Below, piece after piece: positions 283 to 63,688 of a DNA stretch of 64,000 nt. The notes beneath the pieces are model-generated. The model made no database searches. It saw only the letters and a program-made list of their open reading frames with translations, and was not told the DNA's origin. Numbering within the stretch: position 1 is the first letter of the stretch; each line of letters begins with the position of its first letter. The stretch is taken from assembly GCA_002269645.1 (NCBI GenBank), contig NIVC01000268.1, positions 1-64,000 on the forward strand, read 5' to 3'. This stretch comes from Macrostomum lignano (taxonomy: Eukaryota). The position numbers and the translations under genes were made by a program.

Positions 283-4851
<4,569 letters not shown>

Positions 4852-19079: not shown

Positions 19080-22000
19080 GTCAGTCAATCAATCAATCAA
19101 TCAATCAGTCAGTCAATCAATCAGTCAGTCAATCAATCAATCAATCAATCGATCAATCAATCGATCGATCAATTTATGAACTAATTAAAAAAGCAAGCAC
19201 AAAAACAGGCAAGAAATTCACTGCGTCACCAGATCCGTCACACTGACGCTGCCAACTCAGTCAACAAATCGACGTCGGACAGCCGGACACCGCGGCGGCG
19301 GCGGCGGCAGTAGAGTCGCTGCTGTGAAGCGTCAACTTGCGGAACGATCGAACTGGCTGTCGATAGGTCAGCACTGCGGCCATGTGCGCCTGTTTGTGCA
19401 CCACAGGAACCGGACCAGTGCGACAGTGCTGCTACCCTGCCAGCTGGACACCCCGGCCGCTAAGCTGATCGCCCAATCGCGAGCTGACAACAGCGACACC
19501 GGTGGCGCGCTGTCGGCGATCTACGTTGAAACACCAGACGGTCGGTTGCGAAGGCTTGGCGCTCAGGAGCGGCCGCTGCAACTTCAGGACAGCCTGCTGA
19601 GCCAGCTGGGACACGCTGAGACAGGGCTCAGGCAGTGGCTGGGAGCCGGTCCTGAAGTACCTCAGCTGATCAGGTTTCACGTTGGCAAACCGGCGGCATC
19701 CTCTTCGCGGACGACGGCTGCCGAGGAAGAGACGACGGCCAGAGAGATTCTTCTGGCCCGTCGGTGCGGCGGCGGTGGCGGAGGCGGAAGGTGGCGGCGG
19801 AGGCTGTGCGAATTGGAGGGCCCTGTTCTGAGGATTTTTCGCGGTGAGTTGCGCTTGTGGCGCCCCCTGGTGCTGGCGCCCCTGGTGCTGGCGCCCCTGA
19901 TGCTGGCGCCCCTGGTGCTGGCGCCCCTGGTGCTGGCGCCCCTGGTGCTGGCGCCCCTGGTGCTGGCGCCCCTGGTGCTGGCGCCTCTGGTGCTGGCGCC
20001 CCTGGTGCTGGCGCCCCTGGTGCTGGCGCCCCTGGTGCTGGCGCCCCTGGTGCTGGCGCTTATTTGGACAATTGAACAAGTTTTCTCAGATATAAAGTAA
20101 TTTAGTGCTGGCTATTGAACTTATGAAAGTGAAGGAAAGTGATCTTTAGGCATGACTATGTTGTTTTGTTGTACGGATTAAGTCAGAGTCGTCAGAAGCA
20201 TTTTTACAGTTCTATGCTTTCTCATCCTCTACTCAATCTGTGACGCACTGCCAGCGCCGCCTGGAATCCTTACATACTGCCGGCTGGCGAGTGCTCACAG
20301 CTGCTCAGACAAACTTGTTAGGGATTCTTTTCTATGTTCAGTTCAAAGCAGTAATTGAGTAGCTTAGCACTCCAGCTTTAACCATGGAGCTTCAGTTGCA
20401 ATAATCTGGATTGGAGACTTTCCAATGAATATTTTAAGTCTGCTTTTCCTTTAACCTCCTCTGTTGCTGGTGCCCCCTCTCTGTAGCTGCCCCCCTCTGT
20501 AGCTGCCCCCCTCTGTAGCTGCCCCCCTCTGTAGCTGCCCCCCTCTGTAGCTGCCCCCCTCCTCTAGCTGTAGCTGCCCCCCTCTGTAGCTAGCGCCCCT
20601 TCTCTTTATCAACTGTTACAATCAAACCGCGTATCGCACTAAGCCTTAAGAGTCTGATTGAAAGAATCCTCAAGAAACTCCAGACTGAAAGTTGGGAAGC
20701 TGTTTTCTCTAAGAAATAGAAGCCCTATTTGTTAACTGATCATTGATACATAGCATCGATACAAGTCCTTTTGCTCCGTGCAATATGAAAACCGGAAAAT
20801 AAGGTCAAATAAAAGGCAATTGTCAGTACAGTGTGTACTTTTAAAACCACAAAATTCAAAACAGACACAGAAGGCACCGCCATTAAATTGGTGATTTTTC
20901 TACCTGGCGGCCGGGTCGATACTCAGACATCATCATCGAGCAAGAAGAGCAGCGGGCATCGGAGACCACCGCACCGTCTGGATGTTCGCAGCTGCGGCGG
21001 AGATCGATCGTCGCGATCGACATGTGGCGCCCAGCTCGCCTTCAATGATGAGGCCAGCATGAGAGAGTGGCAGCAGCGATTGGAGCTGGCGAGTACTGCT
21101 TTATGAGTTTTCTTTATAAGTCTGGAGTGGTGTCTGCTTTGAGTCTGCCATGATTCTGACTTTGAGTCTGGCTTTAAGTCTGCTTTGAGTCTGCCTTGAG
21201 TCTGCTTTGAGTCTGCCATGATTCTGCTTTAAGTGGCTTTGAGTCTGGCTTTAAGTCTGCTTTGAGTCTGCTTTGAGTCTGCTTTGAGTCTGCTTTGAGT
21301 CTGCTTTGAATCTGCTTTGAGTCTGGCTTTGAGTCTGCCTTGATTCTGCTTTGAGTTTGCTTTAAGTCTGGCTTTGGTCTGCCTTGACATGATTCTGCTT
21401 TGAGTCTGCTTTCAGTCTGACTTGATTCTGCTTTGACCCTGGCTTTAAGTCTGGCTTTAAGTCTGATTTGAGTCTGCTTTGAGTGTGCTTTGAGTCTGCT
21501 TTGAGTCTACTTTGAATCTACTTTAAGTCTGGCTTTGGTCTGCCTTGAAATTATTCTGCTTTGAGTCTGCTTTTAGTCTGTCTTGATTCTGCTTTGAGCC
21601 TGGTTTTGAGTCTGATTTGAGTTTTTTTTATTAGAGGCAGGGGGGTTGTGTGCACCCTGGCGCAAATTAAGCGTCATTGGCACACAACCGGCGAGAGGCA
21701 TTACTGCCCATTCCGCCGACTCCCCTGAGCAGGCATACAAGCGCGCGGATACGTTACGCAGGCACACACTCACACAGGAGTGTACAGCGGCCCTAACTTT
21801 ATCAATTGTTAGGCATGTACACTTCACTGCGCCTTGGGGGGGTTGGCTCTCAAGGCCGTTAATTGCACAAGCGAGCCAAGCCAAGATTCTAATCCAGCGC
21901 GCCCCAAATTAATGTGGCTGCACTTGGAATCGAGCCTGGGTCGGGGCACACCAGAGCAGCTGGGCTACGGCCCCCCCTTTGAGTTTGGATTTGAGTCTGC

Positions 22001-25000
22001 TTTGAGTCTGCGTTGAGTTTCTTTTGAGTATATCTTTGAGTCTGCTTTAAGTGTGGCTTAGAGTCTGGTTTAGAGTCTGATTTGAGTATCCGTAGAGTAT
22101 GGCTTTGAGTCTGCTTTGACTCAACTTAAGCCTATAATTTATACCCTGATTAAACTAACTGTCCCTCTGTGCGCATGCATTTAAATTGCTAAGGGTAGCG
22201 CGGGTTGGATAGGGGAGATGGAGCGTGGGCGGCCAATAACCAGCACTACTTAGCCCTTCAGTTTTCTGCTTCTTGGATAACTCTAATAAGACAGTCATAA
22301 AATCAGATTACATTATCCGAATTTGGAAGCCTGCAAAATCCTGCGCTGACCTGTGTAGGATTAGCGGTGAAATTTTGCCTTGAGTAATTAACTTTGGAAA
22401 TTTTATCAGGCTTCAGGCATCTCAGCATTCTAATCTTTGAAATATTTGAGACATTACAGGGCCATCAGTAAATTGAGATACACGTAGCGATATGGAAAAT
22501 ATATTCAGTTTTTTTTATTAACAGCCTTTAAGTGCACTTTTAGATTGGCGAGAAAATTTAATCAACCGATAAGGAAGTTTTAATGGCCTATATACAGATG
22601 AGACGATAGGAGAACCGGGTAATAAACAGCCCCCCAGAATAGCCGCAGTGGGTAATAAACAGCCCCCAGAATAACCGCAGTGGGTAATAAACAGCCCCTC
22701 AGAATAACCGCAGTGGGTAATAAACAGCCCCCAGAATAACCACAGTGGGTAATAAACAACCCCCCAGAATAACCGCAGTGGGTAATAAACAGCCCCCAAA
22801 ATAACCGCAGTGAGTAATAAACAGCCCCCAGAATAACCACAGTGGGTAATAAACAGCCCCCCAGAATAACCGCAGTGGGTAATAAACAGCCCCTCAGAAT
22901 AACCGCAGTGAGTAATAAACAGCCCCCCAGAATAACCGCAGTGGGTAATAAACAACCCCCCAGAATAACCGCAGTGGGTAATAAACAGCCCCCTAATATC
23001 CACAGTGGGTAATAAACAGCCCCCCCAGAATAACCGCAGTGGGTAATAAACAGCCCCCCCCCAGAATAACCGCAATGGTAATAAACAGCCCCCCCAGAAT
23101 AACCGCAGTGGGTAATAAACAGCCCCCAAAATAACCGCAGTGGGTAATAAACAGCCCCCAAAATAACCGCAGTGGGTAATAAACAGCCCCCAGAATAACC
23201 ACAGTGGGTAATAAACAACCCCCCAGAATAACCGCAGTGGGTAATAAACAGCCCCCAAAATAACCGCAGTGAGTAATAAACAGCCCCCAGAATAACCACA
23301 GTGGGTAATAAACAGCCCCCCAGAATAACCGCAGTGGGTAATAAACAGCCCCTCAGAATAACCGCAGTGAGTAATAAACAGCCCCCCAGAATAACCGCAG
23401 TGGGTAATAAACAACCCCCCAGAATAACCGCAGTGGGTAATAAACAGCCCCCTAATATCCACAGTGGGTAATAAACAGCCCCCCCCAGAATAACCGCAGT
23501 GGGTAATAAACAGCCCCCCCCAGAATAACCGCAATGGTAATAAACAGCCCCCCCCAGAATAACCGCAGTGGGTAATAAACAGCCCCCAAAATAACCGCAG
23601 TGGGTAATAAACAGCCCCCAAAATAACCGCAGTGGGTAATAAACAGCCCCCAGAATAACCACAGTGGGTAATAAACAGCCCCCCAGAATAACCGCAGTGG
23701 GTAATAAACAGCCCCCCAGAATAACCGCAGTGAGTAATAAACAGCCCCCTAATATCCACAGTGGGTAATAAACAGCCCCCCAGAATAACCGCAGTGGGTA
23801 ATAAACAGCCCCCCAGAATAACCGCAATGGTAATAAACAGCCCCCCCAGAATAACCGCAGTGGGTAATAAACAACCCCCCAGAATAACCGCAGTGGGTAA
23901 TAAACAGCCCCCTAATATCCACAGTGGGTAATAAACAGCCCCCCCAGAATAACCGCAGTGGGTAATAAACAGCCCCCTAATATCCACAGTGGGTAATAAA
24001 CAGCCCCCCCCAGAATAACCGCAGTGGGTAATAAACAGCCCTCAAGAATAACCGCAGTGGGTAATAAACAGCCCCCAAGAATAACCGCAGTGGGTAATAA
24101 ACAGCCCTCAAGAATAACCGCAGTGGGTAATAAACAGCCCCCCCAGAATAACCGCAGTGGGTAATAAACAGCCCCCCCAGAATAACCGCAGTGGGTAATA
24201 AACAGCCCCCCCAGAATAACCGCAGTGGGTAATAAACAGCTCTCCACAGTTAACAGCCTCAGCGATTTACTTAGCAACAAAAACTGCCCCACCCCAGGCT
24301 ATCAGCCAGCCTGTGGACAAGGCGGACCTGTCCAATCGGCAGCTGAATCTGATGCCGGAGTCCGTGTTTCACCTGGGCGACCGCCTACTGAGCCTCAATC
24401 TCAGGCGCAACTGTTTACAGTCATCAAAAATGACGCCAGATTCTTCAGCTTCACAGCGGGGAGACAGATTGTCTGGCCACCTGGAGGACATTCAAATGTG
24501 AGTCACATTTAAAAAAATCCTGACTCACTATCCCTGGCCCTAACTCTGCTTTATAAGTACCTTATCTATTTTTCAGATTCCGAAATTTAACTAGTCTGGA
24601 TTTGTCCGAGAACTTTCTAACCACTTTGCCCGCGTGCCTGTGCCGGCTGCGCTCTTTAACTGAGCTAAATATAGCAGCCAATCAGATTGCGGCGCTGCCT
24701 AACGAGATTTCCAATCTGATAAAGTAAGCGACTATAAAATTATCCTAATTATTATTTCAAGATTAAAGTCAGTACCTCTTCACTCAAGGTCAGATTGTGT
24801 CGAACTAGGTTGTCAGTAGTATCGAAGGACATTTATAGCTTCAGCAGTGTCAAACTATAAGTGTCAGTAAGTGTGAAAATAAGTATCAGTGGTGTCAAAA
24901 TATAAGTGTCAGCAGTGCCAAACTATAAGTGTCAGCAGTGTCAAACTATAAGTGTCAGTAAGTGTCAAACTGTAAGTGTCAGTAAGTGTCAAACTATTAG

Positions 25001-28000
25001 TGTCAGCAGTGTCAAACTATAATTGCGTCAGCAGAGTCAAACTATAAGTGTCAGCAGTGTCAAACTATAAGTGTCAGCAATGTCAAACTATAAGTGTCAG
25101 TAAGTGTCAAACTATAAGTGTCAGCAATGTCAAACTATAAGTGTCAGTAAGTGTCAGCAGTGTCAAACTATAAGTGTCAGCAGTGTCAAATATAAGTGTC
25201 AGTAAGTGTCAAAATATAGTGTCAGCAGTGTCAAACTATAAGTGTCAGCAGTGTCAAACTATAAGTGTCAGTAAGTGTCAAAATATGAGTGTCAGCAGTG
25301 TCAAACTATAAGTGTCAGCAGTGTCAAACTATAAGTGTCAGTAAGTGTCAAAATATGAGTGTCAGCAGTGTCAAACTATAAGTGTCAGCAGTGTCAAACT
25401 ATAAGTGTCAGCAGTGTCAAACTATAAGTGTCAGCAGTGTCAAACTATAAGTGTCAGCAGTGTCAAACTATAAGTGTCAGCAGAGTCAAACACTGCCAAA
25501 GTGCAAGCAATAAAATCTGTATCTAGGTGCATAAAACTCCCACTGAACCGCTCAGACTTCGGAGCCTCTACCTGTACAACAATCGACTCACGGAGCTGCC
25601 AGACTCGATGACGTCACTCGCTCAACTGTCCATGCTGCTGATCGCTTTTAATCGGTTCGAAGAATTGCCTCCCGTATTAGCCTGTCTGCCTAGCAACAGT
25701 GACGTCATTTTGCCTGGCAACCAGCTCAGTAGCATCCCGGATGCTCTGGCTCAACGCCTGGACGCTGGAGGGATTAAACGAATTAATTTGCGTTTTAATC
25801 GGCTGGTTGCGATTGACAGTGGGATCAGTTTGGGACTGGCTGGACTCACGCACCTTGTGTACCTGGATCTCAGGGATAATCTGGTGAGCTTTAGTTATTG
25901 GGATTTGAGATTTGATTAGACAGGGGTTAGATTAGATCATGGTAGATTAGATAATGTTAGATTAGATTGGGTGTCGGTACATTAGATTTGGCTATATTAG
26001 ATTTTGTTATATTAAATTGGATTATATTAGATTATGTTAAGATTAGATTTAGTTAGATTAGATTTGATTATATTAGACTTGGTTAGATTAGATTGGGTGA
26101 GATTAGAATCGGTTAAATTAGATTTGTTTAAATTAGATTCGGTTATATTAAGATTGGAGGGAGAGATTAGACTTGATTCGATTAGATTGGGTTAGATTAG
26201 ATTGGGTGAAATTAGATTCGGTTAAATTAGATTGTGTCAGATTAGATTGTGTCAGATTAGATTGTGTCAGATTAGATTGTGTCAGATTAGATTGTGTCAG
26301 ATTAGATTGTGTCAGATTAGATTGTGTCAGATTAGATTGTGTCAGATTAGATTGTGTCAGATTAGATTGTGTCAGATTAGATTGTGTCAGATTAGATTGT
26401 GTCAGCTTAGATTGTGTCAGATTAGATTGTGTCAGATTAGATTGTGTTAGTCTAGATTTTGAGGCTAAAAATTTATAAAACTACATCTGCTACGTAGTAC
26501 ATTGCTGTCAGTTAAAAATACGAAATTTCCTTTGGCTTAGCTGTAAGCACAGAAACTCATTTGCTTTTCGCAAACTATTCAAAGGAACAAAAACCTTTTT
26601 GAAGTGAAAAATAATGTGCGAGCGCGTAAATATAGTAAAATAGATATTATTAACTTTCTTTGTCGAAGCTCTTCTTCGTTGATGAAAATTCAGGAATTCA
26701 CAAGAAAATACTCATATATAGTGTGCTAAATTTAACTGGATACAGAGACAAGAATTTTAGATTTTTTCAGAAAACAGTTCAAAAGAATTTTCCAAAGTCA
26801 GCTTAGATTTTTTAGCCAACCTCCCCCCCCCCTGTCCGCTATATTTACCAGATCGAGACGCTGGATTTGCAGCCGCTGTCCCATCTGGAATTCCTGTCCT
26901 GTGACAGGAACAGGCTTGCAGACATTTTCGTCAACGGAACGGCACTGAGAACTCTGTTATTGGTTGAAAATAGTGAGTTTTGAGTACTTTCTGTTTAGTG
27001 CGAGCTATGAACTATATTTTATCCTTTATAGACTATTTTAACTCAATGATATATTTTGACTAAAACGCTACTACGCTCGTATTTTTTATAAGCCATACTT
27101 AATTACACTATTGTTGCTTACATTTTACGATTCAATACACTTAGAAAGAAAGAGACTGGCTTTCCTCAAGGTCACTGGAGAGAGACTCGCTTTCCCCAAT
27201 TATTGGAGAAAAACAGGCTTTCCCTTAAGGTCACTGGAGAGAGACTGCCTTTCTTCAAGGTCACTGGAGAGAAACTGGCTTTCCTCAAGGTCACTGGAGA
27301 GAAACTGGCTTTCCTCAAGGTCACTGGAGAGAAACTGGCTATCCCCAAGGTCACTGGAGAAAAACTGGCTCTCCTCAAGGTCACTTGAGAGAAACTGGCT
27401 TTCCTCAAGGTCACTGGAGAGAAACTGGCTTTCCTCAAGGTCACTGGAGAGAAACTGGCTTTCCTCAAGGTCACTGGAGAGAAACTGGCTCTCTTCAATG
27501 TCACTGGATCGAGAGACTCGCTTTCCGCAAGATTACTCGAGAGACTCGCTTTCCTCAAGGTCACTAAAGAGAGACTGTCTTTCCTTAAGGTCACTGGAGA
27601 GAGACTCGCTTTCCGCAAGGTTACTGAAGAGAAACTTGCTTTTCTCAAGGTCACTGGACAAAAATAGGCTTTTATTCATATCAAAGTCACTAAAGAGATA
27701 CTGCCTTCCTTAAGGTCACTGGAAAGGAATTCGCTTACCTCAAGGTCACTAAACAGAGACTGCCTTTCCTCAAGGTCACTAGAGAGAAACTGGATTTCCC
27801 CAAAGCTGATCGACAATTTCCAAAGAACCTCCCCAAGCCAATGTCTCGATCCCCGCCAACGCAGAGCTGCAAAGCCTAAAAATATCGCCGCCACCGAAGC
27901 GTCTCGAATGCCTCGACGTCAGTGACAACCGCCTTGACAGCCTGCCCGACTGTTTGTGGCCGTCTGGCCGAGCCAGCCTCCTCCGACTGCACGCCGGCGG

Positions 28001-31000
28001 CAATGAAATTCGCCGACTGCCAGCCGACATCTGGCGCTGCGTCAAGTTGCAGAGCCTCCGTCTGGAGCGAAACCGAATAGCCGAGCTGCCAGCTGCGCCA
28101 GCCGAGGCTGCCAACGGTCTGACTGAGCTGCTAGAGCTCTGTCTCCATAGCAACCAGTTAACTAGGCTACCAGCGGCTCTGTTCCACCTGACGCCAGCTC
28201 TAGTTGAGTTGAATTTAGCCAACAATCAGCTCGTTGAGTTGCCAAAACTGCCGCTTAGGAATTCCGGCAATCGACTTCAAGTCCTGACGGCTTCGTTCAA
28301 CCAATTCAGCGATGCAGATGTCAGCTTCCTTGCGGAGAACTTTGGGAGCAGCCTGCGGACTCTGCTGCTAGCGTTTAACCGGCTCACGGAGATTAACGAC
28401 GAGTGAGTCTGGGCTTCTTTTGAGTACATTGTGTGCCGCAGGATTCGAATTGTGTTTGAGGGGAATTAGAATGGTATTTGAGGGGGAATTAGAAGGGTGT
28501 TTGAGGGGAATTAGAATGGTGTTTGAGGGGGATTATATTGCTGTTTGAGGGAGAATGAGAATCGTGTTTGAGGGCAATTAGAATGGTAAGTTGAGGGGAA
28601 TTAGAATGCTGTTTGAGGAGAATTATAATGATTTGAGGGGAATTAGAATGTTGTTTGAGGGGAATTAGAATGCTGTTTGAGGAGAATTATAATGGTATTT
28701 AAGGGGAATTAGAACGCTGTTTGAGGGGAATTAGAATGGTGTTTGAGGAGAATTATAATGGTCTCATTTGAGGGGAATTAGAATGTTTTTGAGGGGAATT
28801 AGAATGGTATTTGAAGGGAATTAGAATGTTTTTTGAGGGGAATTAGAATGGTATTTGAAGGGAATTAGAATGTTGTTTGAGGGGAATTAGAATGGTATTT
28901 GAAGGGAATTAGAATGTTGTTTGAGGGGAATTAGAATGGTATTTGAAGGGAATTAGAATGTTGTTTGAGGGGAATTAGAATGGTATATGAAGGCAATTGG
29001 AATGGTATTTGAAGGGAATTAAACTGGTACTTGAGGAGAATAAGAATTGTATGTGAGGTGAATTAAAATTGGTGTTTGAGAGGAATTAGAATGGTGTTGG
29101 AGAGGAATTAGAATAGAGTTTGAGGCGAATTAAAATAGTATTTGAGGGGAATAAGACTGATGTTTGAGAGAAAATTTTAATTTTACTTGATGGGAATTAG
29201 AAGGGTGTTAAAAAGAATTGCCCCGATGAACTTTGAGCGCGTAATGTCTCATAAAAAGAAGCACCCAAAGCAAGTTCTGTTCTTGTTCTTGTCAGAATTT
29301 TTTATTAACTTCGCTCACAGTGCATGTACTTGCCACGAAATAAAAGCATTCAAACGTACCCCATCATCAAAGAACAATGCTTCAGTTTTGCGAGCTTCGC
29401 GAATTGAACATATCCGGCAACCAGCTGAAGACGCTGCCATCGACTTTGTCTCGTCTCGAACGCCTGGTTACGATCAGGGCTCACTCCAACTGCCTGCAGC
29501 GACTGCCGGACCTCAGCGACTCGCCCAGACTGCGAACTCTTGACGTTGGCTGCAATTCAACACTGAGCGGATCTGTGCGCAATCTGATGGAATCCAGGCT
29601 CAGCTTCTTGGACCTCTCCTGCAACCAGCAGATGGGCATGTCTATGCAGGACCTGGCTTCCGTGAGGTGGGAAACTGTGGTTGGACCTGTGTCTGACCGG
29701 TGATTCCCATGTCTAATCGGAGATTCCCGTGTCTGACCGGTGATTCCCTGTCTAACCGGTGATTCTCTGTCTAACCGGTGATTCCCTGTCTAACCGGTGA
29801 TTCCCTGTCTAACCGGTGATTCCCTGTCTAATCGAGGATTCCATGTTTGAAACCGGTGATTCCCTGTCTAACCGATAATTCCCTGTCTAACCAGTGATTC
29901 CATGTTTGAAACCGGTGATTCCCTGTCTAATCGAGGATTCCATGTTTGAAACCGGTGATTCCCTGTCTAACCGATAATTCCCTGTCTAACCGGTGATTCC
30001 ATGTTTGAAACCGGTGATTCCTTGTCTAATCGGAGATTCCCGTGTCTAACCGGTGATTCCCTGTCTAACCGGTGATTCCCTGTCTAACCGGTGATTCCCT
30101 GTCTAACCGGTGATTCCCTGTCTAACCGGTGATTCCCTGTCTAACCGGTGATTCCCTGTCTAATCGAGGATTCCATGTTTGAAACCGGTGATTCCCTGTC
30201 TAACCGATAATTCCCTGTCTAACCGGTGATTCCATGTTTGAAACCGGTGATTCCCTGTCTAATCGAGGATTCCATGTTTGAAACCGGTGATTCCCTGTCT
30301 AACCGATAATTCCCTGTCTAACCGGTGATTCCATGTTTGAAACCGGTGATTCCTTGTCTAATCGGTGATTCCCTGTCTAACTGGTGATTCCCTGTCTAAC
30401 CGGTGATTCCTTGCCTAATCGGTGATTCCCTGTCTAACTGGTGATTCCCTGTCTAATCGGTGATTCCCTGTCTAACTGGTGATTCCCTGTCTGACCGGTG
30501 ATTCCCTGTCTAACCGGTGATTCCTTGTCTAATCGGTGATTCCCTGTCTAACTGGTGATTCCCTGTCTAACCAATGATTACCCTGTCTAACCAATAATTA
30601 CCCTGTCTAACCAATGATTACGCTGTCTAACCAATAATTACGCTGTCTAACCAATGATTACGCTGTCTAACCAATGATTACGCTGTCTAACCAATGATCC
30701 CCTGTCTAACCGGTGATTCGATATCTAACCGGTGATTCCCTGTCTAACACACCAATATGCGTGACGTCAAGCAAACCGGGGCCTATAACTCGAAACAGCA
30801 GATAATCAAGCAGATGTCAGAATTATTAAAAATGCAATTATTTTCGTTCTCCAGCAAAGAAAGAAGTCTACGATCGACATATCACACAGAGAGAAAAATC
30901 CATCAAATCATTCGAATCCTTCAATAAATCCAACATCCTTCATTTCCTTTTAACTTCATTCGCATAATACCTATTTAGGTAAATTATGATCCAGATTTCC

Positions 31001-41706: not shown

Positions 41707-43812
41707 TCAGCGCGAACCGGAGCGAGAGCGCGAGCGCGAACGAGAATGAGACGGCGAACGAGAGTGCGACGGCGAGCGCGACATCGAAGCGGCGCCACGG
41801 CGATCATTGTCCTCGTCGTCGTAGTTGTCGCGGCCTGAAGCTGGCGGCAGCGGTGCCATCGGCGATGGCGAGCGATGCTGAGGCGGCGGAGAGCCCGATG
41901 AAGCTCGGCGACGCCTATTATCTTCGCCGCCTCCGTTCTCGTCGGTGGCGTCACGTCGTCTGCTGCGGTCTCGGTCGCTGCGGTCACGGTCGCCGCGGTC
42001 GCTGCGGTCACGGTCGCCGCGGTCGCTGCGGTCACGGTCGCCACGGTCGCTGCCGCGATGATGCCGAGATTCGCGGTCATCGCCTCCGCCGCCTCGGCTG
42101 CCGCTGCCAGCTGGCGAGCGAGACGATCGACGGCCGCGCCCGGAGCTGCGACGCGGGGAACGCGGCGAGCGGCTGCGCAGGTAGGGGGGGGGGTGGGTGC
42201 GTCGGCGGCTGTGCTGGAAGGGGAATTACATCCCTTCTACCACTTCCTACCCGTAGTTCTACCTCTCCCACCTGTAATTCTACCACATTTCCCTGTAATT
42301 CTACCATTTGCTACCTGTTAGTCTACCATTTTCTACATGTTAGTCTACCATTTTCTACATGTTAGTCTACCATTTTCTACATGTTAGTCTGCCATTTGCT
42401 ACCTGTTAGTCTACCATTTTTTACATGTTAGTCTACCATTTTCTATCTGTATTTTTACCTCTTTTACCTGTAATTTTAGTAATTTCTACCTACAATTTTA
42501 CGAATTACTGCCTGTATTTCTACCAATTTCGACCTGTAATTATACCACTTTCTATCATACTCGTATAAACAGATTTATGCTTCTGAACCACTCCATTCCC
42601 AAGTTTCGCATTAACTTTTCATTTCTCTCTCGACCTCTGTTCTAATCGACAAGACTCTCAACTCTCACCTCCTGTCCCTACGATCCCTACGGTCTCGGTC
42701 CCTGTCCCGGTCGCGACCACGGTCCCTGTCCCGGTCGTCCCGTTCGCGCCGATGATCCATATGGTCGCGTTCCTTCTGTATGCGCATCATCTCTGCAGGG
42801 GTGCGCCTGTAGCCGCGGGCAATCTCAATTTCAATAGTCCGGCCCAGCAGCTGGGTTCGGTCCATCCGGCGGATAGCTTCGCGGGCGTCGCTCGTGCGGT
42901 CGAACGTAAACGATTGTTTTTAAATTCAATCGAATCGCGGTTAAGCCCACGACGAGAAGATTTATCGAGTTAAGGAATTTTTCAAGTTTTTTTAGGTTGA
43001 CACAGAAAATAAAACGAAAAACTTCCTAGCTTACCTACTGCCGATCAGTAAGTAGTGCAGATTGGGCGTCGAAGTATAAATAAGATAAGAAAAAAATAAT
43101 TTCACTAGCTTAAATTTCAAAGACAGCTGTAGCAACCAATGGATTTCCCAACAGATATTTTATGTATCGATCTGGGGAAATTATCAGTTTGCTACTCAGA
43201 TTAGAAATCCAGCTAGTGAAATCTTTTACAAAAAACAGGTAACGAGTGCCTCGCTTAGAAATTTAAATTGGCTGACTGACTGACTGATTAGACACAATTG
43301 CTTGGCTGTTGTTGGCCTTGGATGACAGCAGTTGCTTTTAGGACTAGGGCTTTGGCTAGGGCCGTGTCTGCAACTTCAAGCAAGCTGACAGTTGACAGTC
43401 TGGCTGTCAGTCGAACTCAGTGTTGAAACACCGGTTGCTGGTTAGTGTGCATTGGCTTTAGTCCAGAGACAGGATTGAATAGGTCTTAGTGATAGGACTG
43501 ATTGACTGATTGGTTGGTTGGTTTTCAGAATAGTTTCCTGCAGATATTTAAAGTTGATTTGGTTATTAATTTACAACAAAACAGACAACTGCAATGCAGA
43601 GCCTACAAGATATAAAAATGCGTATATTGTAAACCAGCCAGGCAAAATTATTGAACTGAAACGAGTACATTACTAAAAAATGAATTAAACTTATAGAAAA
43701 AGGATATTCTACAAATGCATACCCTTTCATTCGGCCGGTGTAGTAGTCCAATGGAATGGTTATATCCGTGATGTAGCCAAACTTGGAGAAGGCACGACGG
43801 AGATCATCTTGC
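41707..43812 (-). CDS. SRSF10: SRSF10/SRSF12-like serine/arginine-rich splicing factor (first coding exon not located)
   Basis: Exons 43812-43708 (QDDLRRAFSKFGYITDITIPLDYYTGRMKGYAFVE), 42905-42669 (FDRTSDAREAIRRMDRTQLLGRTIEIEIARGYRRTPAEM; RD repeats), 42208-41707 (RS/RD tail ending SRSRSRSGSR*). All phase 2. The RRM matches the SRSF10 pattern PLDFYT..RGFAYVQF..A..G.RKTP..M. Confidence 0.88.
42270..42555. repeat. 22-bp minisatellite (CTACCATTTTCTACATGTTAGT), last intron of the SR gene
   Basis: Tandem, partly degenerate. Confidence 0.85.
42906..43707 (-). other. U12-type (minor spliceosome) AT-AC intron, 802 bp
   Basis: Donor ATATCCTTT at 43707; branch-site TTCCTTAAC at 42977-42969 and a second CTTAAC at 42945-42940; acceptor TTTAC at 42906. 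Removal gives in-frame VE|FD. Confidence 0.92.
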
Positions 43813-44721: not shown

Positions 44722-47400
44722 TTCGTATTTGGATTTGGCTTCTTTAGAAACTTGTGAAAATTTGTATTTGGTCTATCATTATTTGAAACAGTTTGAGTCT
44801 ATTTTGGTGAAAGCATGCTCACACTTTCAAATCTATGCCAGTGTTGCAACAATAAATGACTTTTGGATTTGGCTTTAGAAACTTGTGAAAATTTGTATTT
44901 GGTCTATCATTATTTCAAACAGTTTGAGTCTATTTTGGTGAAAGCATGCTCACACTTTCAAATCTATGCCAGTGTTGCAACAATAAATGACTTTTGGATT
45001 TGGCTTTAGAAACTTGTGAAAATTTGTATTTGGTCTATCATTATTTCAAACAGTTTGAGTCTATTTTGGTGAAAGCATGCTCACACTTTCAAATCTATGC
45101 CAGTGTTGCAACAATAAATGACTTTTGGATTTGGCTTCAGAAACTTGTGAAAATTTGTATTTGGTCTATCATTATTTGAAACAGTTTGAGTCTATTTTGG
45201 TGAAAGCATGCTCACACTTTCAAATCTATGCCAGTGTTGCAACAATAAATGACTTTTGGATTTGGCTTTAGAAACTTGTGAAAATTTGTATTTGGTCTAT
45301 CATTATTTGAAACAGTTTGAGTCTATTTTGGTGAAAGCATGCTCACACTTTCAAATCTATGCCAGTGTTGCAACAATAAATGACTTTTGGATTTGGCTTT
45401 AGAAACTTGTGAAAATTTGTATTTGGTCTATCATTATTTCAAACAGTTTGAGTCTATTTTGGTGAAAGCATGCTCACACTTTCAAATCTATGCCAGTGTT
45501 GCAACAATAAATGACTTTTGGATTTGGCTTCAGAAACTTGTGAAAATTTGTATTTGGTCTATCATTATTTGAAACAGTTTGAGTCTATTTTGGTGAAAGC
45601 ATGCTCACACTTTCAAATCTATGCCAGTGTTGCAACAATAAATGACTTTTGGATTTGGCTTCAGAAACTTGTGAAAATTTGTATTTGGTCTATCATTATT
45701 TCAAACAGTTTGAGTCTATTTTGGTGAAAGCATGCTCACACTTTCAAATCTATGCCAGTGTTGCAACAATAAATGACTTTTGGATTTGGCTTTAGAAACT
45801 TGTGAAAATTTGTATTTGGTCTATCATTATTTGAAACAGTTTGAGTCTATTTTGGTGAAAGCATGCTCACACTTTCAAATCTATGCCAGTGTTGCAACAA
45901 TAAATGACTTTTGGATTTGGCTTCAGAAACTTGTGAAAATTTGTATTTGGTCTATCATTATTTCAAACAGTTTGAGTCTATTTTGGTGAAAGCATGCTCA
46001 CACTTTCAAATCTATGCCAGTGTTGCAACAATAAATGACTTTTGGATTTGGCTTTAGAAACTTGTGAAAATTTGTATTTGGTCCATCATTATTTCAAACA
46101 GTTTGAGTCTATTTTGGTGAAAGCATGCTCACACTTTCAAATCTATGCCAGTGTTGCAACAATAAATTTTTTTTGGATTTGGCTTTAGAAACTTGTGAAA
46201 ATTTGTATTTGGTCTATCATTATTTCAAACAGTTTGAGTCTATTTTGGTGAAAGCATGCTCACACTTTCAAATCTATGCCAGTGTTGCAACAATAAATGA
46301 CTTTTGGATTTGGCTTCAGAAACTTGTGAAAATTTGTATTTGGTCTATCATTATTTCAAACAGTTTGAGTCTATTTTGGTGAAAGCATGCTCACACTTTC
46401 AAATCTATGCCAGTGTTGCAACAATAAATGACTTTTGGATTTGGCTTCAGAAACTTGTGAAAATTTGTATTTGGTCTATCATTATTTGAAACAGTTTGAG
46501 TCTATTTTGGTGAAAGCATGCTCACACTTTCAAATCTATGCCAGTGTTGCAACAATAAATGACTTTTGGATTTGGCTTCAGAAACTTGTGAAAATTTGTA
46601 TTTGGTCTATCATTATTTGAAACAGTTTGATTCTATTTTGGTGAAAGCATGCTCACACTTTCAAATCTATGCCAGTGTTGCAACAATAAATGACTTTTGG
46701 ATTTGGCTCATACATGTGCAACCTCCAAAATTCGGTCAGCCGTGCGACTTAGTTTTAACAAAAATGCGACGTAGTTTTTGGCCAAAAATGCGACTTACAT
46801 ATAAAAAAACCCGAAAGCAAAATTAACGCAACTTTGGGTAAACGGCAGGAGTAACTATGACTGTTTTATTAAGCTAAAATGCCTCGTCAGCTACTTAGTA
46901 CTACTCTTCAGGTTATTTTTTGGGTGGGCATTTTTGCGACTTCCTTGATTGGCCGCCAAATCGGTCGGCCGGATCGGCCGACTCGGCCGACTGTTGCGCA
47001 TGTATGATTTGGCTTCAGAAACTTGTGAAAATTTGTATTTGGTCTATCATTATTTCAAACAGTTTGAGTCTATTTTGGTGAAAGCATGCTCACACTTTCA
47101 AATCTATGCCAGTGTTGCAACAATAAATGACTTTTGGATTTGGCTTCAGAAACTTGTGAAAATTTGTATTTGGTCTATCATTATTTCAAACAGTTTGAGT
47201 CTATTTTGGTGAAAGCATGCTCACACTTTCAAATCTATGCCAGTGTTGCAACAATAAATGACTTTTGGATTTGGCTTTAGAAACTTGTGAAAATTTGTAT
47301 TTGGTCTATCATTATTTGAAACAGTTTGAGTCTATTTTGGTGAAAGCATGCTCACACTTTCAAATCTATGCCAGTGTTGCAACAATAAATGACTTTTGGA
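44722..47400. repeat. 131-bp satellite, about 18 near-identical copies, interrupted by a MITE
   Basis: Identical ORF starts recur at multiples of 131 bp (45387, 45518, 45780...). Confidence 0.97.
46709..47006. mobile_element. 298-bp MITE with CATACATG termini (hAT- or P-like)
   Basis: TIR CATACATGTGCAAC/GTTGCGCATGTATG; perfect 8-bp TSD ATTTGGCT; subterminal TGCGACTTA motifs. Confidence 0.88.
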
Positions 47401-47411
47401 TTGCATAAGGG

Positions 47412-48268: not shown

Positions 48269-48763
48269 CATAAGGGACCCTTTAAGGCAAATAATTTGGT
48301 TGATTTTTTGCTTTTTCACCTATACTACTTATATCACTTATAAGTCAAAAAATTATGCATGCAAAGATTTGTTCAAATGCCTTATTATAAGCTTTAAAAA
48401 CCCAGAAAGATTGAAATTTATGCTTGAAAATTAACTTTTTTTATTGTTTTTTCCACTTAACAAAAACTCTTCCACATGGTTCTATAAGGTGCACCCAAGG
48501 TGGGCATGAACACTATTTTCTTAAGAGTGATGCACGCCAACTGCGCATACCTACTTTTGGTTACTGTCAAAAAGATGGCCTTTTTCATGGAAAATTCCAG
48601 CGCAAAATGGGGTTGGACATACGCCACACAGGCACATTCATGCAACAGCAGGCAAAGGAAAAAAAATCTGGCACAGTATGGCACAAGACAAAAAATTGGC
48701 ATAATTTGGTACAAGACAAAAACTTCCAACTAGACAATATTTTCTCTAATAGAAAATTAGCTT

Positions 48764-55770: not shown

Positions 55771-58700
55771 CTTACGTTGAATACAATTTATTGCAAATTA
55801 ACTCTACAAAATACACATTGTCAAGAGTAACAAAAATGATAAACAAATAAACCCTTAAAATTAATGTTAAATATGTTGTAGAATTATAGAGTGTAACATT
55901 ATAAGATAGTTAATGTAAATAAAATACATTATTATAGCTTTTCTATCATTTTCATTATAGTCATTTTAGGTCGTAATTAAACGTACCATTTTAACAAATC
56001 ATTTTATTAAAAATAAAGCTATACATAAAAAATTTGTGCTTTTATAGACTTTTTACCTTTTGAAAACTTAAATCAATTTATTTTATAGCTTTATTGCTTT
56101 AAAATTGCCAAAAAAACAAATTTTTATAAAACTTGCCCCCAATTTTTGGATTTTGCCACATGCTAATTTATTGTCAGAGAAAATATTTTCTTGTTGGAAG
56201 TTTTTGTCTTGCACTAAAATATGCCAATTTTTTTGTCTTGCGCCGTACTGTACCAGATTTTTCTCCCTTGCCTGCTATTATGCCAGAACCAGCGTGGCAC
56301 ATGTCAAACCCCCTTTAGCACCAGAATTTTCTGTGAACTTTTGTTTAAAATTTTCTGGCATAAAAACAATCTTCTGGACTATGAAAAGTAGGAGAACTTG
56401 AGTGCGCACATACTACATGGCACATAACCATGTTGCCATAGTCAGGTGGTGGCCTTTTTTGTCGAAAATTCCGGTATGCATAGGCATAGCCAAAGATATT
56501 CGGCGTACATTCGGCGTACATTTGGTCTGCCTTGCAACAGTTGGCGTACATTCAGCATATGCCATGTACGCCGCAAATATGTGGCATGATATGGGATATA
56601 AGGTTGGCATATGAGGCAGTGCTAATTCTCTATTATGTCTACCGTATATTCTTATTCAAATCTCTGCCAAAACTTTACGGTAATTTAAAATGGTCATTTT
56701 AATTTTAACATCTTCAGTTAAACAAATTAAAAAAGACTTAACTTGTTGGTATAGTACAGCAACCAAACTTGTCGAATATTCGTTGCAACGGAAGGTTTTT
56801 ACTTCATTATAATACACCATACACGTTGTGACATCGACAATGTTACGGTCGGGCCTATATTCGGCGTGCATTACGGTATATTCGGCGTACATATGGTTAC
56901 ATTTGGCGTACATAGGTAGCCCTGCCTGAATTTCATTCCAGCGTACACATGCCACCTTCCTGACTATGGCCATGTTGAATGCATATAAAAGTCAAATCCT
57001 GTTTGTGATTCTGCAGCAAACAGCTTCTTTGTAAGCGCATATGATGGAGCACACACACACCTTCTTTAGGAGTGCGCAAGTAGGCTCCTTTTCAGCGCGC
57101 AAGTGTGCACAAATTTGACAAGCGCGCAAGTAACAACTTTTGTGCAAGAATTCTATCCTGGGGGTGAACTAGGTGAAATGACATTTTATGCCAATGGCCC
57201 AATTGCCCTTGCAAAAAGCAACATAAGAGAGAATGAATGTCTTACTTATAGGTTTATTATAGGCCTAACTAAATAATAACCCATAGGCCCTAGGGGCTAG
57301 GGCCTACCATAGCACAACAATTAATTTAATGACATGACAAAAACTTACACAGCTCGATTGGACAAATTTCTGATGTGCAAAACGCGACCCTTTGCATATG
57401 ACATCGTTCTGCCACTGCCAGTAAAACTTGACTTTTTGTTTACAAGAATAGGCTTAAATTAAGGCCTATCTCACTATTAAATAGGAAATGTATTTGGTTA
57501 CAACTTCGGGACAAAAATCGCAAAACAGTACTTGCTAATGCGCGACCGTATTTAAAAATGTTTTTTTAAAAATAGTCAAAATACACGGCTAATAAAACAA
57601 AACAACATTAAAGCAAAATAGAAAGAATTAGCATGTGACAAACTTTAATTACTGTGCGAATACAGCAGAGCTTCTTTAGAAGCCGTTATTATCTGTAAAG
57701 ATTCTAGAAAGTTTTGAATGCAAAAGTTGGTGCGTGTTTGTTTCGCCACACCAGCTGTTTTATATTCATAGGCTAATTTATCACTTTCACGTTTTCAAGG
57801 TTTCAGGTGTTTAAATAAGCCTAGCCTAGGCCCTACTATACGCAGAGGCGGACACGCAGGGCCGCCCCCCCCCCTTCAAAATAGCCTGACAGAACATATT
57901 GCGCCCCCCAAAACCTCAAGTTTGTGCCCCTAAACTTGATTTTTCGCCCCAAACACTTTTGCGCCCATAATAGCCCTAAGTTCCCCTAAGGCCTAAGCTT
58001 GATTTTTCGCCAATGCACACATTTTAGGAATTTTTATCTAGGCCTACTCGTTTTTTAAGATTATATGACAATTGAATCAATAGCTCCTGGGCCTGTATAG
58101 ATAGGCTATAGTCCATAGGCGGCTAGGCCCTAGGACTATTTATTATGACTAGGCCCTAGTGGCTGGCTAAAAATTAAAATTATTTAAATAATAAAAAATG
58201 CTTTTAACTTTAGGCCTTACATTTTTAGACTTAGGCTATATATTTGCTGTATATTAGATAAGAAATCCTAAATTAGGCCCCTAAACAATCTTAATCTCAA
58301 TATAATAGGGCCTAGTATAATCATCTTAATCTTAATACATAATCTCAATTCTCAATCGTTTGTTTTTTTGCAAAAAAAATTCTAGCACATGGTGATGGTG
58401 TAATCAAACTATTTTTATAGGATTTGTTTTGGCACAGGTATGCCATGATCCTATGGCTCACCTAATAGGCCATTACTAACCTTCAACCTATTTATATATC
58501 TTATACAACTTACAGTGGCATACAGTGGCATAGGCAGAGTTAGTGGCTTACTTTTACATATTGCTACATATATTTATTATTGTGATGATAAATTGTTATG
58601 TATGTGATGATATATTGTGATAACAATTGATATTGTTATCACAATATATTATTGTAATGGCACATTGAGTCTTTTCTTTTGTATTATTATCTACTTACTT

Positions 58701-62221: not shown

Positions 62222-63688
62222 ATGTCCGAACAATCAGACGAGGCCATTATTGCCAACATGAAATCGTTGATGGTGACTATTGGCGATTTGAAGGCTGACA
62301 TGTTGCACATGCTGGAAAACGATGCTGGCCTTGTTGACTGTTTCAAAGCCACGCGCAGCGAGTCGGCCAGTCTGGCCCAGGCTGTGGCCGAGCTTGAGAC
62401 CCGATTAGGCCAGGCTATCGAGCGGGCCAGGTCCGAGGTGCTGCCCGAGGTGGACGCGAGATTGGCGGAATATCCTAAGGTGACTAAGATAGCTGACTTA
62501 TGAGCTGCTAGCTGCATCATTGGCACTGATTCTCTATTTGGTCTGTATTGGATAAATCAGTAACTTTAGCCAGGGCCTGAAACACGCTTGGGATTCTTAT
62601 AGTGTCTTCCCATAACCATGGAAGATTCTCAGTTTGTGAGACACCTGTGATAAAAAATATTGGATTGCTAGATTAAAATTTTTTTGCTCCCAGATCCGCA
62701 GAAGCTGGGTCACCGCCACCCTCCCAGATCCCCAGTTGCTAAGCCAGCCTCCCAGATCATCTGTTTCTGGGTCAGCCTCCCAGATCCCCAGTTGCTGAGC
62801 CAGCCTCCCAGATCATCTGTTTCTGGGTCAGCCTCCCAGATCCCCAGTTGCTGGGCCAGCCTCCCCGAGTGTCAGTTGCTGGGCCAGCCTCCCCGAGTGT
62901 CGGTTGCTGGGCCAGCCTCCCCGAGTGTCAGTTGCTGGGCCAGCCTCCCAGATCCTCAGTGGGTGGGCCAGCCTCCCAGATCATCAGTTGCTGAGCCAGC
63001 CTCCCAGATCATCAGTTGCTGAGCCAGCCTCCCAGATCATCAGTTGCTGGACCAACCTCATAGTGTCAGTTGCTGGGCCAGCCTCCCAGAGTGTCAGTTG
63101 CTGGGCCAGCCTTCCGGATCCTCAGTTGCTGGGCCAGCCTCCCAGATCATCAGTTGCTGGACCAACCTCATAGTTTCAGTTGCTGGGCCAGCCTCCCAGA
63201 GTGTCAGTTGCTGGGCCAGCCTTCCGGATCCTCAGTTGCTGGGCCAGCTCCCGGATCCTCAGTTGCTGGGCCAGCCTCCCGGATCATCAGTTGCTGGGCC
63301 AGCCTTCCATCAGTTGCTGGGCCAGCCTCCCAGAGTTTCAGTTGCTAGGCCAGCCTCCCGAATCCTCAGTGGCTGGGCCAACTGTAAAATCAAATCCTCC
63401 CTTCTAAACCGAAACTATCACAGATCCTCATTCTCAGTATTATCACAGAGTTCCCGTCTTCAGTTAATAACCGAAATGTTTGTCCCACCTTCCACAAAGG
63501 TGCTGGAGCAGCTGCGCAGTGCCGAGCTGGTCCACCAGGCCATGTCAGTCATTAGCGACATTCAGTGCCGCATGGCCAGCCTGCAGCAGAGCACTAAAGA
63601 GGGCCGATATCTGGACTGCATCGACGAAGTTGTCGCTCTCGACGCGCTGTTTCGTCGCGATTTACAACTTGTTAAAGAGGATATTCAG
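62222..63688 (+). CDS. ZW10: Probable ZW10 kinetochore/NRZ tethering protein, first two exons (continues beyond window)
   Basis: Exons 62222-62479 and 63500-63688, phase 0 GT-AG. The helical N-terminus aligns by eye with ZW10 (SEVLPEVDARLAEYPKVLEQL ~ [21 protein letters not shown]; KEGRY ~ TEKKY). Confidence 0.6.
62690..63380. repeat. About 28-31-bp minisatellite (CAGTTGCTGGGCCAGCCTCCCAGATCAT), ZW10-like intron 1
   Basis: Tandem variants; source of several spurious ORFs. Confidence 0.92.

What the first reader, a model, noticed from the sequence alone, without database searches (positions are those of the whole stretch)
42906..43707. AT-AC minor-spliceosome intron in an SRSF10 orthologue, with an unusually distant double branch site
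Seen: ATATCCTTT donor, AC acceptor, in-frame join. The perfect TTCCTTAAC is about 65 nt and a second CTTAAC about 35 nt from the 3' end, versus the usual roughly 10-20 nt. Established: vertebrate SRSF10 has a U12 intron within the RRM that ties its level to minor-spliceosome activity, and the minor spliceosome has been lost in several invertebrate lineages. Inference: this organism (probably a flatworm) retains U12 splicing and possibly the SRSF10 sensor circuit. The AC of the second CTTAAC could be a frameshifting alternative acceptor (+34 nt). This is the strongest lead in the window.
Basis: partly seen in the sequence, partly recalled or inferred. Interest (0 to 1): 0.75.

Follow-up and report, generated by a model that had tools for sequence, protein, structure and literature searches.

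The report
Ancient minor-type intron in flatworm SRSF10
The window holds a genuine AT-AC (U12-type) intron in the SRSF10/12 splicing-factor gene of a Macrostomum-like flatworm; animals from cnidarians to fish carry the same intron at the same codon, so it is mostly expected, and its one oddity is a branch-site motif 35-64 bases from the 3' splice site instead of about 12.

Summary
On the minus strand, exon 2 ends ...GTAGA|ATATCCTTT (intron starts 43707). The intron ends ...TTTAC| at 42906, and the join restores the RNP1 motif KGYAFVE|F in phase 2. A perfect TTCCTTAAC lies 64 nt, and a CTTAAC 35 nt, from the 3' splice site.

The gene is an SRSF10/12 orthologue, and I built a four-exon model. 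Its best protein match is Macrostomum lignano, and the window shares repeat families with that genome.

The same phase-2 AT-AC intron sits at the same codon in M. lignano, two cestodes, a trematode, a leech, a cnidarian and a fish. A tardigrade, from a lineage that lost the minor spliceosome, has a GT-AG intron there. A monogenean has no intron there.

Minor snRNAs are already published for schistosomes and planarians, so retention of U12 splicing in a flatworm is not new.

The vertebrate-style sensor module is not supported. The intron has no GA-rich block and shares nothing with the M. lignano intron beyond the donor.

The long branch-site spacing is real. M. lignano shares it (52 nt), and its transcript-based gene model uses that junction. 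Orthologues elsewhere show 11-28 nt. Predicted hairpins could shorten the path, but statistical support is weak. Verdict: a new member of a known kind with one modest curiosity.

The parts
57349..57404 (-). Exon 1 coding part (proposed). It reads ATG..GCTGT|GTAAGT and encodes MSYAKGRVLHIRNLSNRA(V), carrying the RNP2 motif LHIRNL.
   Evidence: An HMM of SRSF10 N-termini scores it 6.5 bits, E=0.48. It has an in-frame ATG and a perfect GTAAGT donor in the required phase 2. Adding it raises the Pfam RRM_1 score from 59.4 to 70.0 bits and extends profile coverage from 12-69 to 2-69. Confidence is moderate.
43708..43812 (-). Exon 2: RRM from (V)QDDLRRAF to KGYAFV-E(GA). The acceptor is ccgcag|G.
42906..43707 (-). 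AT-AC U12-type intron, 802 nt, phase 2
   Evidence: It is orthologous to the AT-AC introns in L001/L002, L004, L005, L006, L007, L008 and L009.
43699..43707 (-). U12-type 5' splice site ATATCCTTT
   Evidence: It is the only RTATCCTT in the window.
42969..42977 (-). Perfect U12 branch-site consensus TTCCTTAAC, with its branch A 64 nt from the 3' splice site
42940..42945 (-). Second, weaker branch-site-like motif (GGG)CTTAAC, 35 nt from the 3' splice site. Its AC is also a possible +34 nt frameshifting acceptor.
42911..42932 (-). Predicted hairpin CGAUUG/CAAUCG with a 10-nt loop, lying between the branch motifs and the 3' splice site. It persists when flanking sequence is added to the fold.
   Evidence: As a device for shortening the distance it does no better than shuffled sequence.
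42934..42953 (-). Predicted hairpin that encloses the second CTTAAC in its loop. It is not robust to added sequence context.
   Evidence: It is predicted and lost in the larger fold.
42906..42907 (-). 3' splice site dinucleotide AC (TTTAC|G)
   Evidence: It is the only acceptor that restores the RRM reading frame.
42669..42905 (-). Exon 3: the rest of the RRM, the RGYRRTPAEM motif and an RD-rich stretch. The donor is AG|GTGAGA.
41707..42208 (-). Exon 4: RS/RD-rich domain ending at TGA (41709-41707). The acceptor is cacag|C.

Best explanation
This is the ancestral metazoan U12-type (AT-AC) intron of the single-RRM SR protein gene SRSF10/12, retained in a Macrostomum-like flatworm.

Inferred from established knowledge of U12 splicing (not tested here):
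- The U11/U12 di-snRNP recognises ATATCCTTT and a TTCCTTAAC-type branch site.
- The intron is excised at the AC at 42907-42906.
- Functional SRSF10 mRNA therefore depends on the minor spliceosome.

Shown here:
- The consensus signals are present.
- This is the only frame-restoring join.
- The intron is orthologous in position and phase across eight species.

The branch-site to 3' splice-site spacing is far outside the 11-13 nt optimum. It is 64 nt for the perfect motif and 35 nt for the weaker one. M. lignano shares the trait at 52 nt.

My preferred account of how the spacing is tolerated is inference only. Competing AC/AG dinucleotides are scarce: there is no AG and only two other ACs in the 64 nt. 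A stable local hairpin built on a shared CGATTG element removes 22 nt from the path in the window and 35 nt in M. lignano. That leaves about 15 nt from the second CTTAAC in the window and about 19 nt in M. lignano. Which A is the real branch point is unknown.
For: Sequence signals:
- The junction sequences are as described, and the join restores RNP1.
- The AT-AC junction is the only join that keeps the frame.

Gene identity:
- Pfam RRM_1 matches.
- The top profile hits are all named SRSF10 or SRSF12.
- The window protein is 52% identical to spider SRSF10, including the GDRKTPxEM motif.

Same codon, same phase, AT-AC intron in other species:
- M. lignano
- Anoplocephala
- Helobdella and the fish Boleophthalmus
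- Opisthorchis, Dibothriocephalus and Hydractinia

Further support:
- A tardigrade, from a lineage reported to lack the minor spliceosome, has GT-AG at the same site.
- The window and M. lignano introns share only ATATCCTTTT, so the signals are held by selection rather than by recent shared ancestry.
- The M. lignano annotation is RNA-seq based, and its protein P0001 (..YAFVHYNHSS..) requires the AT-AC junction 52 nt past the only branch-like motif.
- Branch-site distances are tabulated.
- The hairpins fold more stably than shuffled sequence. In one search, z was -2.3 for the window and -2.8 for M. lignano. In one search, 5% of window shuffles and 0 of 500 M. lignano shuffles folded as well. 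The CGATTG hairpin survives added sequence context.
Against: - There are no transcript, lariat or snRNA data for this organism.
- Rfam finds no snRNA in the window, though none would be expected in 64 kb.
- The long spacing violates the one quantitative rule for U12 3' splice sites, an optimum of 11-13 nt.
- The hairpin-collapsed distance is no shorter than in dinucleotide shuffles. The fraction of shuffles at or below the observed value was 0.38-0.83.
- The upstream hairpin disappears when exon sequence is included in the fold.
- Exon 1 is assigned on a weak HMM score.
Confidence: 0.88

Rival explanations
1. The full vertebrate-type SRSF10 sensor operates here. In that module the minor intron competes with a nested U2-type intron and with a GA-rich, SRSF10-bound poison exon carrying a poly(A) site, so SRSF10 output tracks minor-spliceosome activity and is autoregulated.
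For: The AT-AC intron is orthologous to the vertebrate one. The fish intron shows the expected in-frame stop and a GA-rich block. The module itself is described. A trivial dependence of SRSF10 on minor splicing holds in any species that keeps this intron.
Against: - The window intron reaches at most 56% purine in any 50 nt. All flatworm introns stay at or below 68%, against 92% in fish.
- There is no strong GT donor in the first 200 nt, although this test also missed the fish site.
- No internal sequence is conserved between the window and M. lignano introns.
Confidence: 0.08
2. The two branch motifs drive regulated unproductive splicing. The distal TTCCTTAAC would pair with the AC inside the second CTTAAC, 30 nt away, giving a +34 nt frameshifted transcript that is a target for nonsense-mediated decay. 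This would be a different, lineage-specific way of tuning SRSF10.
For: That AC is the first AC or AG downstream of the perfect branch site. The +34 and +10 acceptors both shift the frame to a stop with an exon junction downstream. A second CTTAAC is unlikely by chance, at about 0.01-0.02.
Against: Thirty nt is still outside the preferred range. M. lignano has no second motif in an equivalent arrangement. No transcript evidence exists.
Confidence: 0.15
3. The intron is removed by the major spliceosome as a U2-type AT-AC intron, or through nearby GT-AG sites.
For: U2-type AT-AC introns do exist. A long branch-to-acceptor distance is normal for U2-type introns.
Against: - The donor is a 9/9 match to the U12 consensus, and the branch motif is also 9/9.
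- The last 40 nt carry no polypyrimidine tract.
- No GT-AG pair restores the frame.
- Where the minor spliceosome was lost, this intron changed to GTAAGC...polyY...CAG. That shows what a U2-type version looks like.
Confidence: 0.04
4. The locus is a decaying pseudogene copy whose U12 signals are relics.
For: Macrostomum genomes are highly duplicated. Exon 1 was hard to find, and intron 1 is about 13.5 kb of repeats.
Against: All four exons are open and in frame. The RRM scores 70 bits, and the RS domain and every splice signal are intact.
Confidence: 0.04

Closest known systems
Vertebrate SRSF10 intron 2 (AT-AC, U12-type), Meinke et al. 2020, PMC7244321
   Same: The gene family, codon position after RNP1 and phase 2 are the same. 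So are the ATATCCTTT donor, the CCTTAAC-type branch site and the AC acceptor (fish locus L006).
   Different: The fish branch site is 11 nt from the acceptor, against 35-64 nt here. The vertebrate intron holds a nested U2-type intron and a GA-rich autoregulatory exon 3 with a poly(A) site, and none is detectable here.
Macrostomum lignano BOX15_Mlig026735g1 (P0001; loci L001 and L002)
   Same: It is the closest protein, at 62-67% identity. It has the same AT-AC intron, a distant branch motif (GTCTTTAAC, 52 nt), a TCGATTG element inside a predicted hairpin between branch site and acceptor, and tandem-repeat-rich introns.
   Different: The intron sequence is otherwise unrelated, at 1682-1753 nt against 802 nt. 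It has a single imperfect branch motif. The hairpin partner of CGATTG lies upstream rather than downstream.
Orthologous intron in parasitic flatworms (Opisthorchis, Dibothriocephalus, Anoplocephala)
   Same: They have GA|ATATCCTTTT donors, TTCCTTRAC branch sites and AC acceptors at the same position.
   Different: Their branch-to-acceptor distances of 12, 20 and 23 nt are near-canonical. Many of their public gene models read through the donor as ..VEYPF...
Structure-assisted 3' splice-site choice in yeast U2-type introns with distant branch points (from my own knowledge, Meyer et al. 2011, Mol Cell; not checked here)
   Same: A hairpin between the branch point and the acceptor would shorten the effective distance and hide decoy acceptors.
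   Different: That system is U2-type and has been shown experimentally. Here it is only a prediction for a U12-type intron, with weak statistics.

Membership tests
U12-type (minor) intron, AT-AC subtype | 5' splice site matching RTATCCTT | tested here: met
   ATATCCTTT at 43707-43699
U12-type (minor) intron, AT-AC subtype | Branch-site consensus TCCTTRAY | tested here: met
   TTCCTTAAC at 42977-42969
U12-type (minor) intron, AT-AC subtype | Short branch-site to 3' splice-site distance (optimum 11-13 nt) | tested here: not met
   The distances are 64 nt and 35 nt. Orthologues show 11-28 nt, and M. lignano 52 nt.
U12-type (minor) intron, AT-AC subtype | Terminal AC and no polypyrimidine tract | tested here: met
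   The intron ends ...GAATTTAAAAACAATCGTTTAC|.
U12-type (minor) intron, AT-AC subtype | Orthologous position to an accepted U12 intron | tested here: met
   The codon and phase match those in fish SRSF10 and six invertebrates.
U12-type (minor) intron, AT-AC subtype | Excision depends on U11, U12, U4atac and U6atac | not testable with these tools
   Only 64 kb of the genome is available, and Rfam finds no snRNA in it. Flatworm minor snRNAs are published.
SRSF10/12 SR protein | Single N-terminal RRM | tested here: met
   Pfam RRM_1 scores 70 bits over profile positions 2-69.
SRSF10/12 SR protein | Post-RRM motif G-x-R-K/R-T-P-x-x-M, with closest relatives named SRSF10/12 | tested here: met
   The motif is RGYRRTPAEM. 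The top hits are SRSF10/12, and the protein is 52% identical to spider SRSF10.
SRSF10/12 SR protein | C-terminal RS-rich domain | tested here: met
   Exons 3-4 encode RD/RS repeats.
Vertebrate SRSF10 minor/major competition and autoregulation module | GA-rich SRSF10-dependent enhancer exon inside the AT-AC intron | tested here: not met
   Maximum purine content in 50 nt is 0.56 here and 0.92 in fish.
Vertebrate SRSF10 minor/major competition and autoregulation module | Competing downstream U2-type 5' splice site with a nested U2-type intron | tested here: inconclusive
   No strong GT donor lies in the first 200 nt, but the same crude test also missed the fish site.
Vertebrate SRSF10 minor/major competition and autoregulation module | Conserved intronic region | tested here: not met
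   Only ATATCCTTTT is shared with the M. lignano intron.

The most novel reading that the evidence does not exclude
Macrostomid flatworms splice a U12-type intron whose branch site lies 50-65 nt from the acceptor. They would do so either because their minor spliceosome has a relaxed distance rule, or because a local RNA hairpin built on a conserved CGATTG element brings branch site and acceptor together and hides decoy ACs. This would be a structure-assisted mode of U12 3' splice-site selection that I have not seen described.
Probability: 0.3. Interest if true: 0.55.

Novelty: new member of a known kind. Interest (0 to 1): 0.3.

Why it matters
The result shows that the SRSF10 minor intron is very old. 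It is present at the same codon from cnidarians to fish and across several flatworm classes. It behaves as expected when the minor spliceosome is lost: it becomes GT-AG in a tardigrade and is absent in a monogenean.

It gives a correct gene model for a locus that automatic pipelines often get wrong. Many flatworm and leech models read through the donor as ..EYPF...

It also flags one testable oddity. Two diverged Macrostomum sequences keep the branch motif 52-64 nt from the acceptor, well outside the range that works in human cells. If branch-point mapping confirms this, it would say something about how the minor spliceosome measures that distance.

It does not show that the vertebrate SRSF10 sensor circuit exists in flatworms.

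Tried and rejected
- **Exon 1.** Regex and tblastn searches failed. tblastx against the M. lignano locus found only exon 2 and repeats. A weak candidate at 48550 (MKKAIFLTVTKS) was rejected as a poor RNP2. An HMM of N-termini finally gave the 57404-57349 candidate.
- **GT-AG alternatives.** The donors GG|GTATGC and TTT|GTAGAA have no acceptor that restores the frame.
- **Conserved poison exon.** blastn of the window intron against the M. lignano intron found nothing beyond the donor.
- **Hairpin-collapsed distance.** As a statistic it is no better than shuffled sequence, so I do not claim it as evidence. The upstream hairpin is lost in a larger fold.
- **Other U12 signals.** Rfam at gathering threshold found nothing in the window. 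No other U12-like donors occur in the window or in L001/L002.
- **Failed look-ups.** P0004, P0095 and P0034 are not on record, so a fish stands in for mammals.
- **Papers not held.** Dietrich 2001 (PMC86782) and Levine and Durbin 2001 (PMC60238) were unavailable. The rule that spacing above 20 nt activates alternative 3' splice sites therefore rests on my memory of Dietrich 2001 and on the review read.
- **Macrostomum literature.** No paper in the library combines Macrostomum with AT-AC.

Full report
**1. Observation**

The gene lies on the minus strand. Exon sequence ...AAAGGGTATGCATTTGTAGA is followed at 43707 by ATATCCTTTTTC. The intron ends ...AAAAACAATCGTTTAC at 42906, and the next exon begins GTTCGACCGCACG. 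Joining GA|G TTC gives ...GRMKGYAFVEFDRTSDAREAIRRMD..., a complete RNP1 octamer, in phase 2.

TTCCTTAAC is at 42977-42969 and CTTAAC at 42945-42940. Their branch adenosines are 64 and 35 nt from the last intron base.

RTATCCTT and TTCCTTAAC each occur once in the window, against 5.55 and 0.78 expected. The motifs alone are therefore not remarkable. What is remarkable is that each motif's single copy lies at the ends of the one intron whose removal restores the RRM.

Only three A[CG] dinucleotides, and no AG at all, lie between the perfect branch motif and the exon. The two alternatives (+34 and +10 nt) both shift the frame.

**2. Gene and organism**

tblastn with a remembered human SRSF10 sequence found two RRM exons. 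A database search with the spliced peptide returned one protein, M. lignano BOX15_Mlig026735g1, at 67% identity. A profile search returned proteins named SRSF10 or SRSF12 from vertebrates, spiders, molluscs, cnidarians and sponges. The window protein is 52% identical to spider SRSF10, including the GDRKTPxEM motif.

My gene model has four coding exons:

| Exon | Coordinates (minus strand) | Notes |
|---|---|---|
| 1 | 57404-57349 | MSYAKGRVLHIRNLSNRA(V); weak HMM score, but in-frame ATG, perfect GTAAGT donor, correct phase |
| 2 | 43812-43708 | RRM up to KGYAFV-E |
| 3 | 42905-42669 | rest of RRM, RGYRRTPAEM, RD-rich stretch |
| 4 | 42208-41707 | RS/RD-rich domain, ends at TGA |

Adding exon 1 raises the Pfam RRM_1 score from 59.4 to 70.0 bits and completes the domain.

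The window shares a 28-bp satellite with the M. lignano loci at 84-87% identity, and interspersed repeats at 72-92%. It is packed with tandem repeats, as reported for M. lignano. The source is therefore a Macrostomum genome. The gene is either an orthologue from a related species or an old paralogue, because the introns are unalignable.

**3. Comparative test of the intron**

| Species (locus) | Intron at the RNP1 codon | Donor | Branch motif | Distance to 3' splice site (nt) |
|---|---|---|---|---|
| Fish Boleophthalmus (L006) | AT-AC | CA\|ATATCCTTT | CCCTTAAC | 11 |
| Trematode Opisthorchis (L007) | AT-AC | GA\|ATATCCTTTT | TTCCTTAAC | 12 |
| Cnidarian Hydractinia (L009) | AT-AC | CA\|ATATCTTTT | CTTCTTAAC | 14 |
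| Cestode Dibothriocephalus (L008) | AT-AC | GA\|ATATCCTTTT | TTCCTTGAC | 20 |
| Cestode Anoplocephala (L004) | AT-AC | GA\|ATATCCTTTT | TTCCTTAAC | 23 |
| Leech Helobdella (L005) | AT-AC | CA\|ATATCCTTT | CCCTTAAC | 28 |
| M. lignano (L001/L002) | AT-AC | CA\|ATATCCTTTT | GTCTTTAAC | 52 |
| This window | AT-AC | GA\|ATATCCTTT | TTCCTTAAC / CTTAAC | 64 / 35 |

Two negative controls fit the picture. The tardigrade Ramazzottius has GTAAGC...ctctcgcag at the very same position, and tardigrades are listed among animals that lost the minor spliceosome. The monogenean Cichlidogyrus encodes the RRM in one exon.

Several public flatworm and leech gene models contain ..EYPF.., which is the translated read-through of GA|ATATCCTTT. 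Their pipelines missed the AT-AC intron.

The M. lignano annotation is transcript-based, and P0001 requires the AT-AC junction. That amounts to transcript-level support for splicing 52 nt beyond the only branch-like motif.

**4. What is known already**

Minor snRNAs are published for Schistosoma and Schmidtea, and minor introns for Schistosoma. Retention of U12 splicing in a flatworm is therefore not new. I found no paper that links Macrostomum with AT-AC introns.

**5. The sensor circuit**

In vertebrates the AT-AC intron encloses a U2-type intron and a GA-rich exon 3. That exon carries an SRSF10-dependent enhancer and a poly(A) site.

The fish intron shows the expected in-frame stop and a block that is 92% purine. 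The leech and Hydractinia introns also have purine-rich blocks. All flatworm introns peak at 54-68%, and the window at 56%.

Nothing inside the intron is conserved between the window and M. lignano. The vertebrate form of the module is therefore not supported here. The simple dependence of SRSF10 mRNA on minor splicing still follows from the intron itself.

**6. The spacing anomaly**

Reviews give an optimum of 11-13 nt and describe a defined distance constraint. intronIC searches only -55..-5, so it would not see the perfect motif in this intron.

Local folding predicts hairpins between branch motif and acceptor in both Macrostomum sequences. In one search these scored -14.8 kcal/mol (z -2.3) for the window and -12.7 kcal/mol (z -2.8) for M. 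lignano. In one search, 5% of window shuffles and 0 of 500 M. lignano shuffles reached the observed energy.

The hairpin containing CGATTG persists with added flanks. It would leave about 15 nt from the second CTTAAC in the window, or about 19 nt in M. lignano.

Shuffled sequences collapse to similar path lengths, and the upstream window hairpin is context-dependent. I therefore treat the hairpin idea as a hypothesis and not as a finding.

TCGATTG occurs just downstream of the branch site in the window, M. lignano and D. latus, and as TCGATTGCC in the last two. I cannot explain this.

**7. Verdict**

This is a real, orthologous U12-type intron in a flatworm SRSF10/12 gene, and an expected retention of an ancient feature. 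The only unusual trait is the long branch-to-acceptor spacing shared by two Macrostomum sequences. It needs junction reads and branch-point mapping before more can be said.

Noticed in passing
window 42927-42933; L001 about 11716-11724; L008 about 2211-2219: The 7-mer TCGATTG lies between the branch motif and the acceptor of this intron in the window, in M. lignano and in the cestode D. latus. In the last two it extends to TCGATTGCC. In both Macrostomum sequences it forms one arm of the predicted hairpin. I estimate chance sharing at roughly 1e-4 to 1e-3, and I have no explanation for it.
   Followed up: partly
L005 (leech) intron position about 486; L009 (Hydractinia) intron position about 490; L006 (fish) intron position about 226: Purine-rich blocks (84-92% in 50 nt) lie inside the AT-AC intron of fish, leech and cnidarian, but not in any flatworm. 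The GA-rich element of the vertebrate autoregulatory exon may therefore predate vertebrates and have been lost in flatworms. The leech block could simply be a (GA)n microsatellite.
   Followed up: partly
proteins P0072, P0122, P0124, P0139, P0141, P0143, P0144, P0149, P0154: Public gene models of the leech and many trematodes and cestodes contain ..(I/V)(E/Q)YPF.. at the RNP1 position. This is the translated read-through of the ATATCCTTT donor, so these models are mis-spliced or truncated because the AT-AC intron was not recognised.
   Followed up: partly
L010 1285-1390; L003 3050-3373: The intron has taken a different fate in two other lineages. It is converted in place to GT-AG in the tardigrade Ramazzottius, and it is absent in the monogenean Cichlidogyrus, where the RRM is in one exon.
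   Followed up: yes
window 44728-47402: A 131-bp satellite of about 15-20 copies at 98% identity, with a 393-bp higher-order period, lies inside the proposed 13.5-kb intron 1 of the SRSF10 gene.
   Followed up: no
window 62715-63380; L001 11939-12345: A 28-bp tandem repeat (GCCAGCCTCCCAGATCCTCAGTTGCTGG) is shared at 84-87% identity with an array inside intron 3 of the M. lignano SRSF10 locus. Other interspersed repeats (36.4-36.8 kb, 46.7-47.0 kb, 52.7 kb, 55.0-55.7 kb) match L001/L002 at 72-92%.
   Followed up: partly
window 19324-28406 (+): Exons of a PHLPP-like phosphatase gene lie on the plus strand. The RA_3 domain is at 19.3-20.1 kb, and leucine-rich repeats are at 25.5-25.9 and 27.9-28.4 kb. 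The introns are filled with tandem repeats.
   Followed up: partly
window 2239-4142 (-): Two exons of a polypeptide GalNAc-transferase-like gene (Glycos_transf_2, Glyco_transf_7C) are separated by a 22-bp tandem array.
   Followed up: partly
window 42208-42213 (-): Exon 4 of the SRSF10 gene has two AG acceptors 5 nt apart (ttccag|cacag|). Only the distal one keeps the RS-domain frame. The proximal one gives an Ala-rich frame.
   Followed up: partly
whole window: U12-signal words are under-represented relative to dinucleotide shuffles. RTATCCTT occurs once against 5.55 expected, and CTTAAC 17 times against 38.65 expected (sd 6.1). This may only reflect the large fraction of tandem repeats.
   Followed up: no
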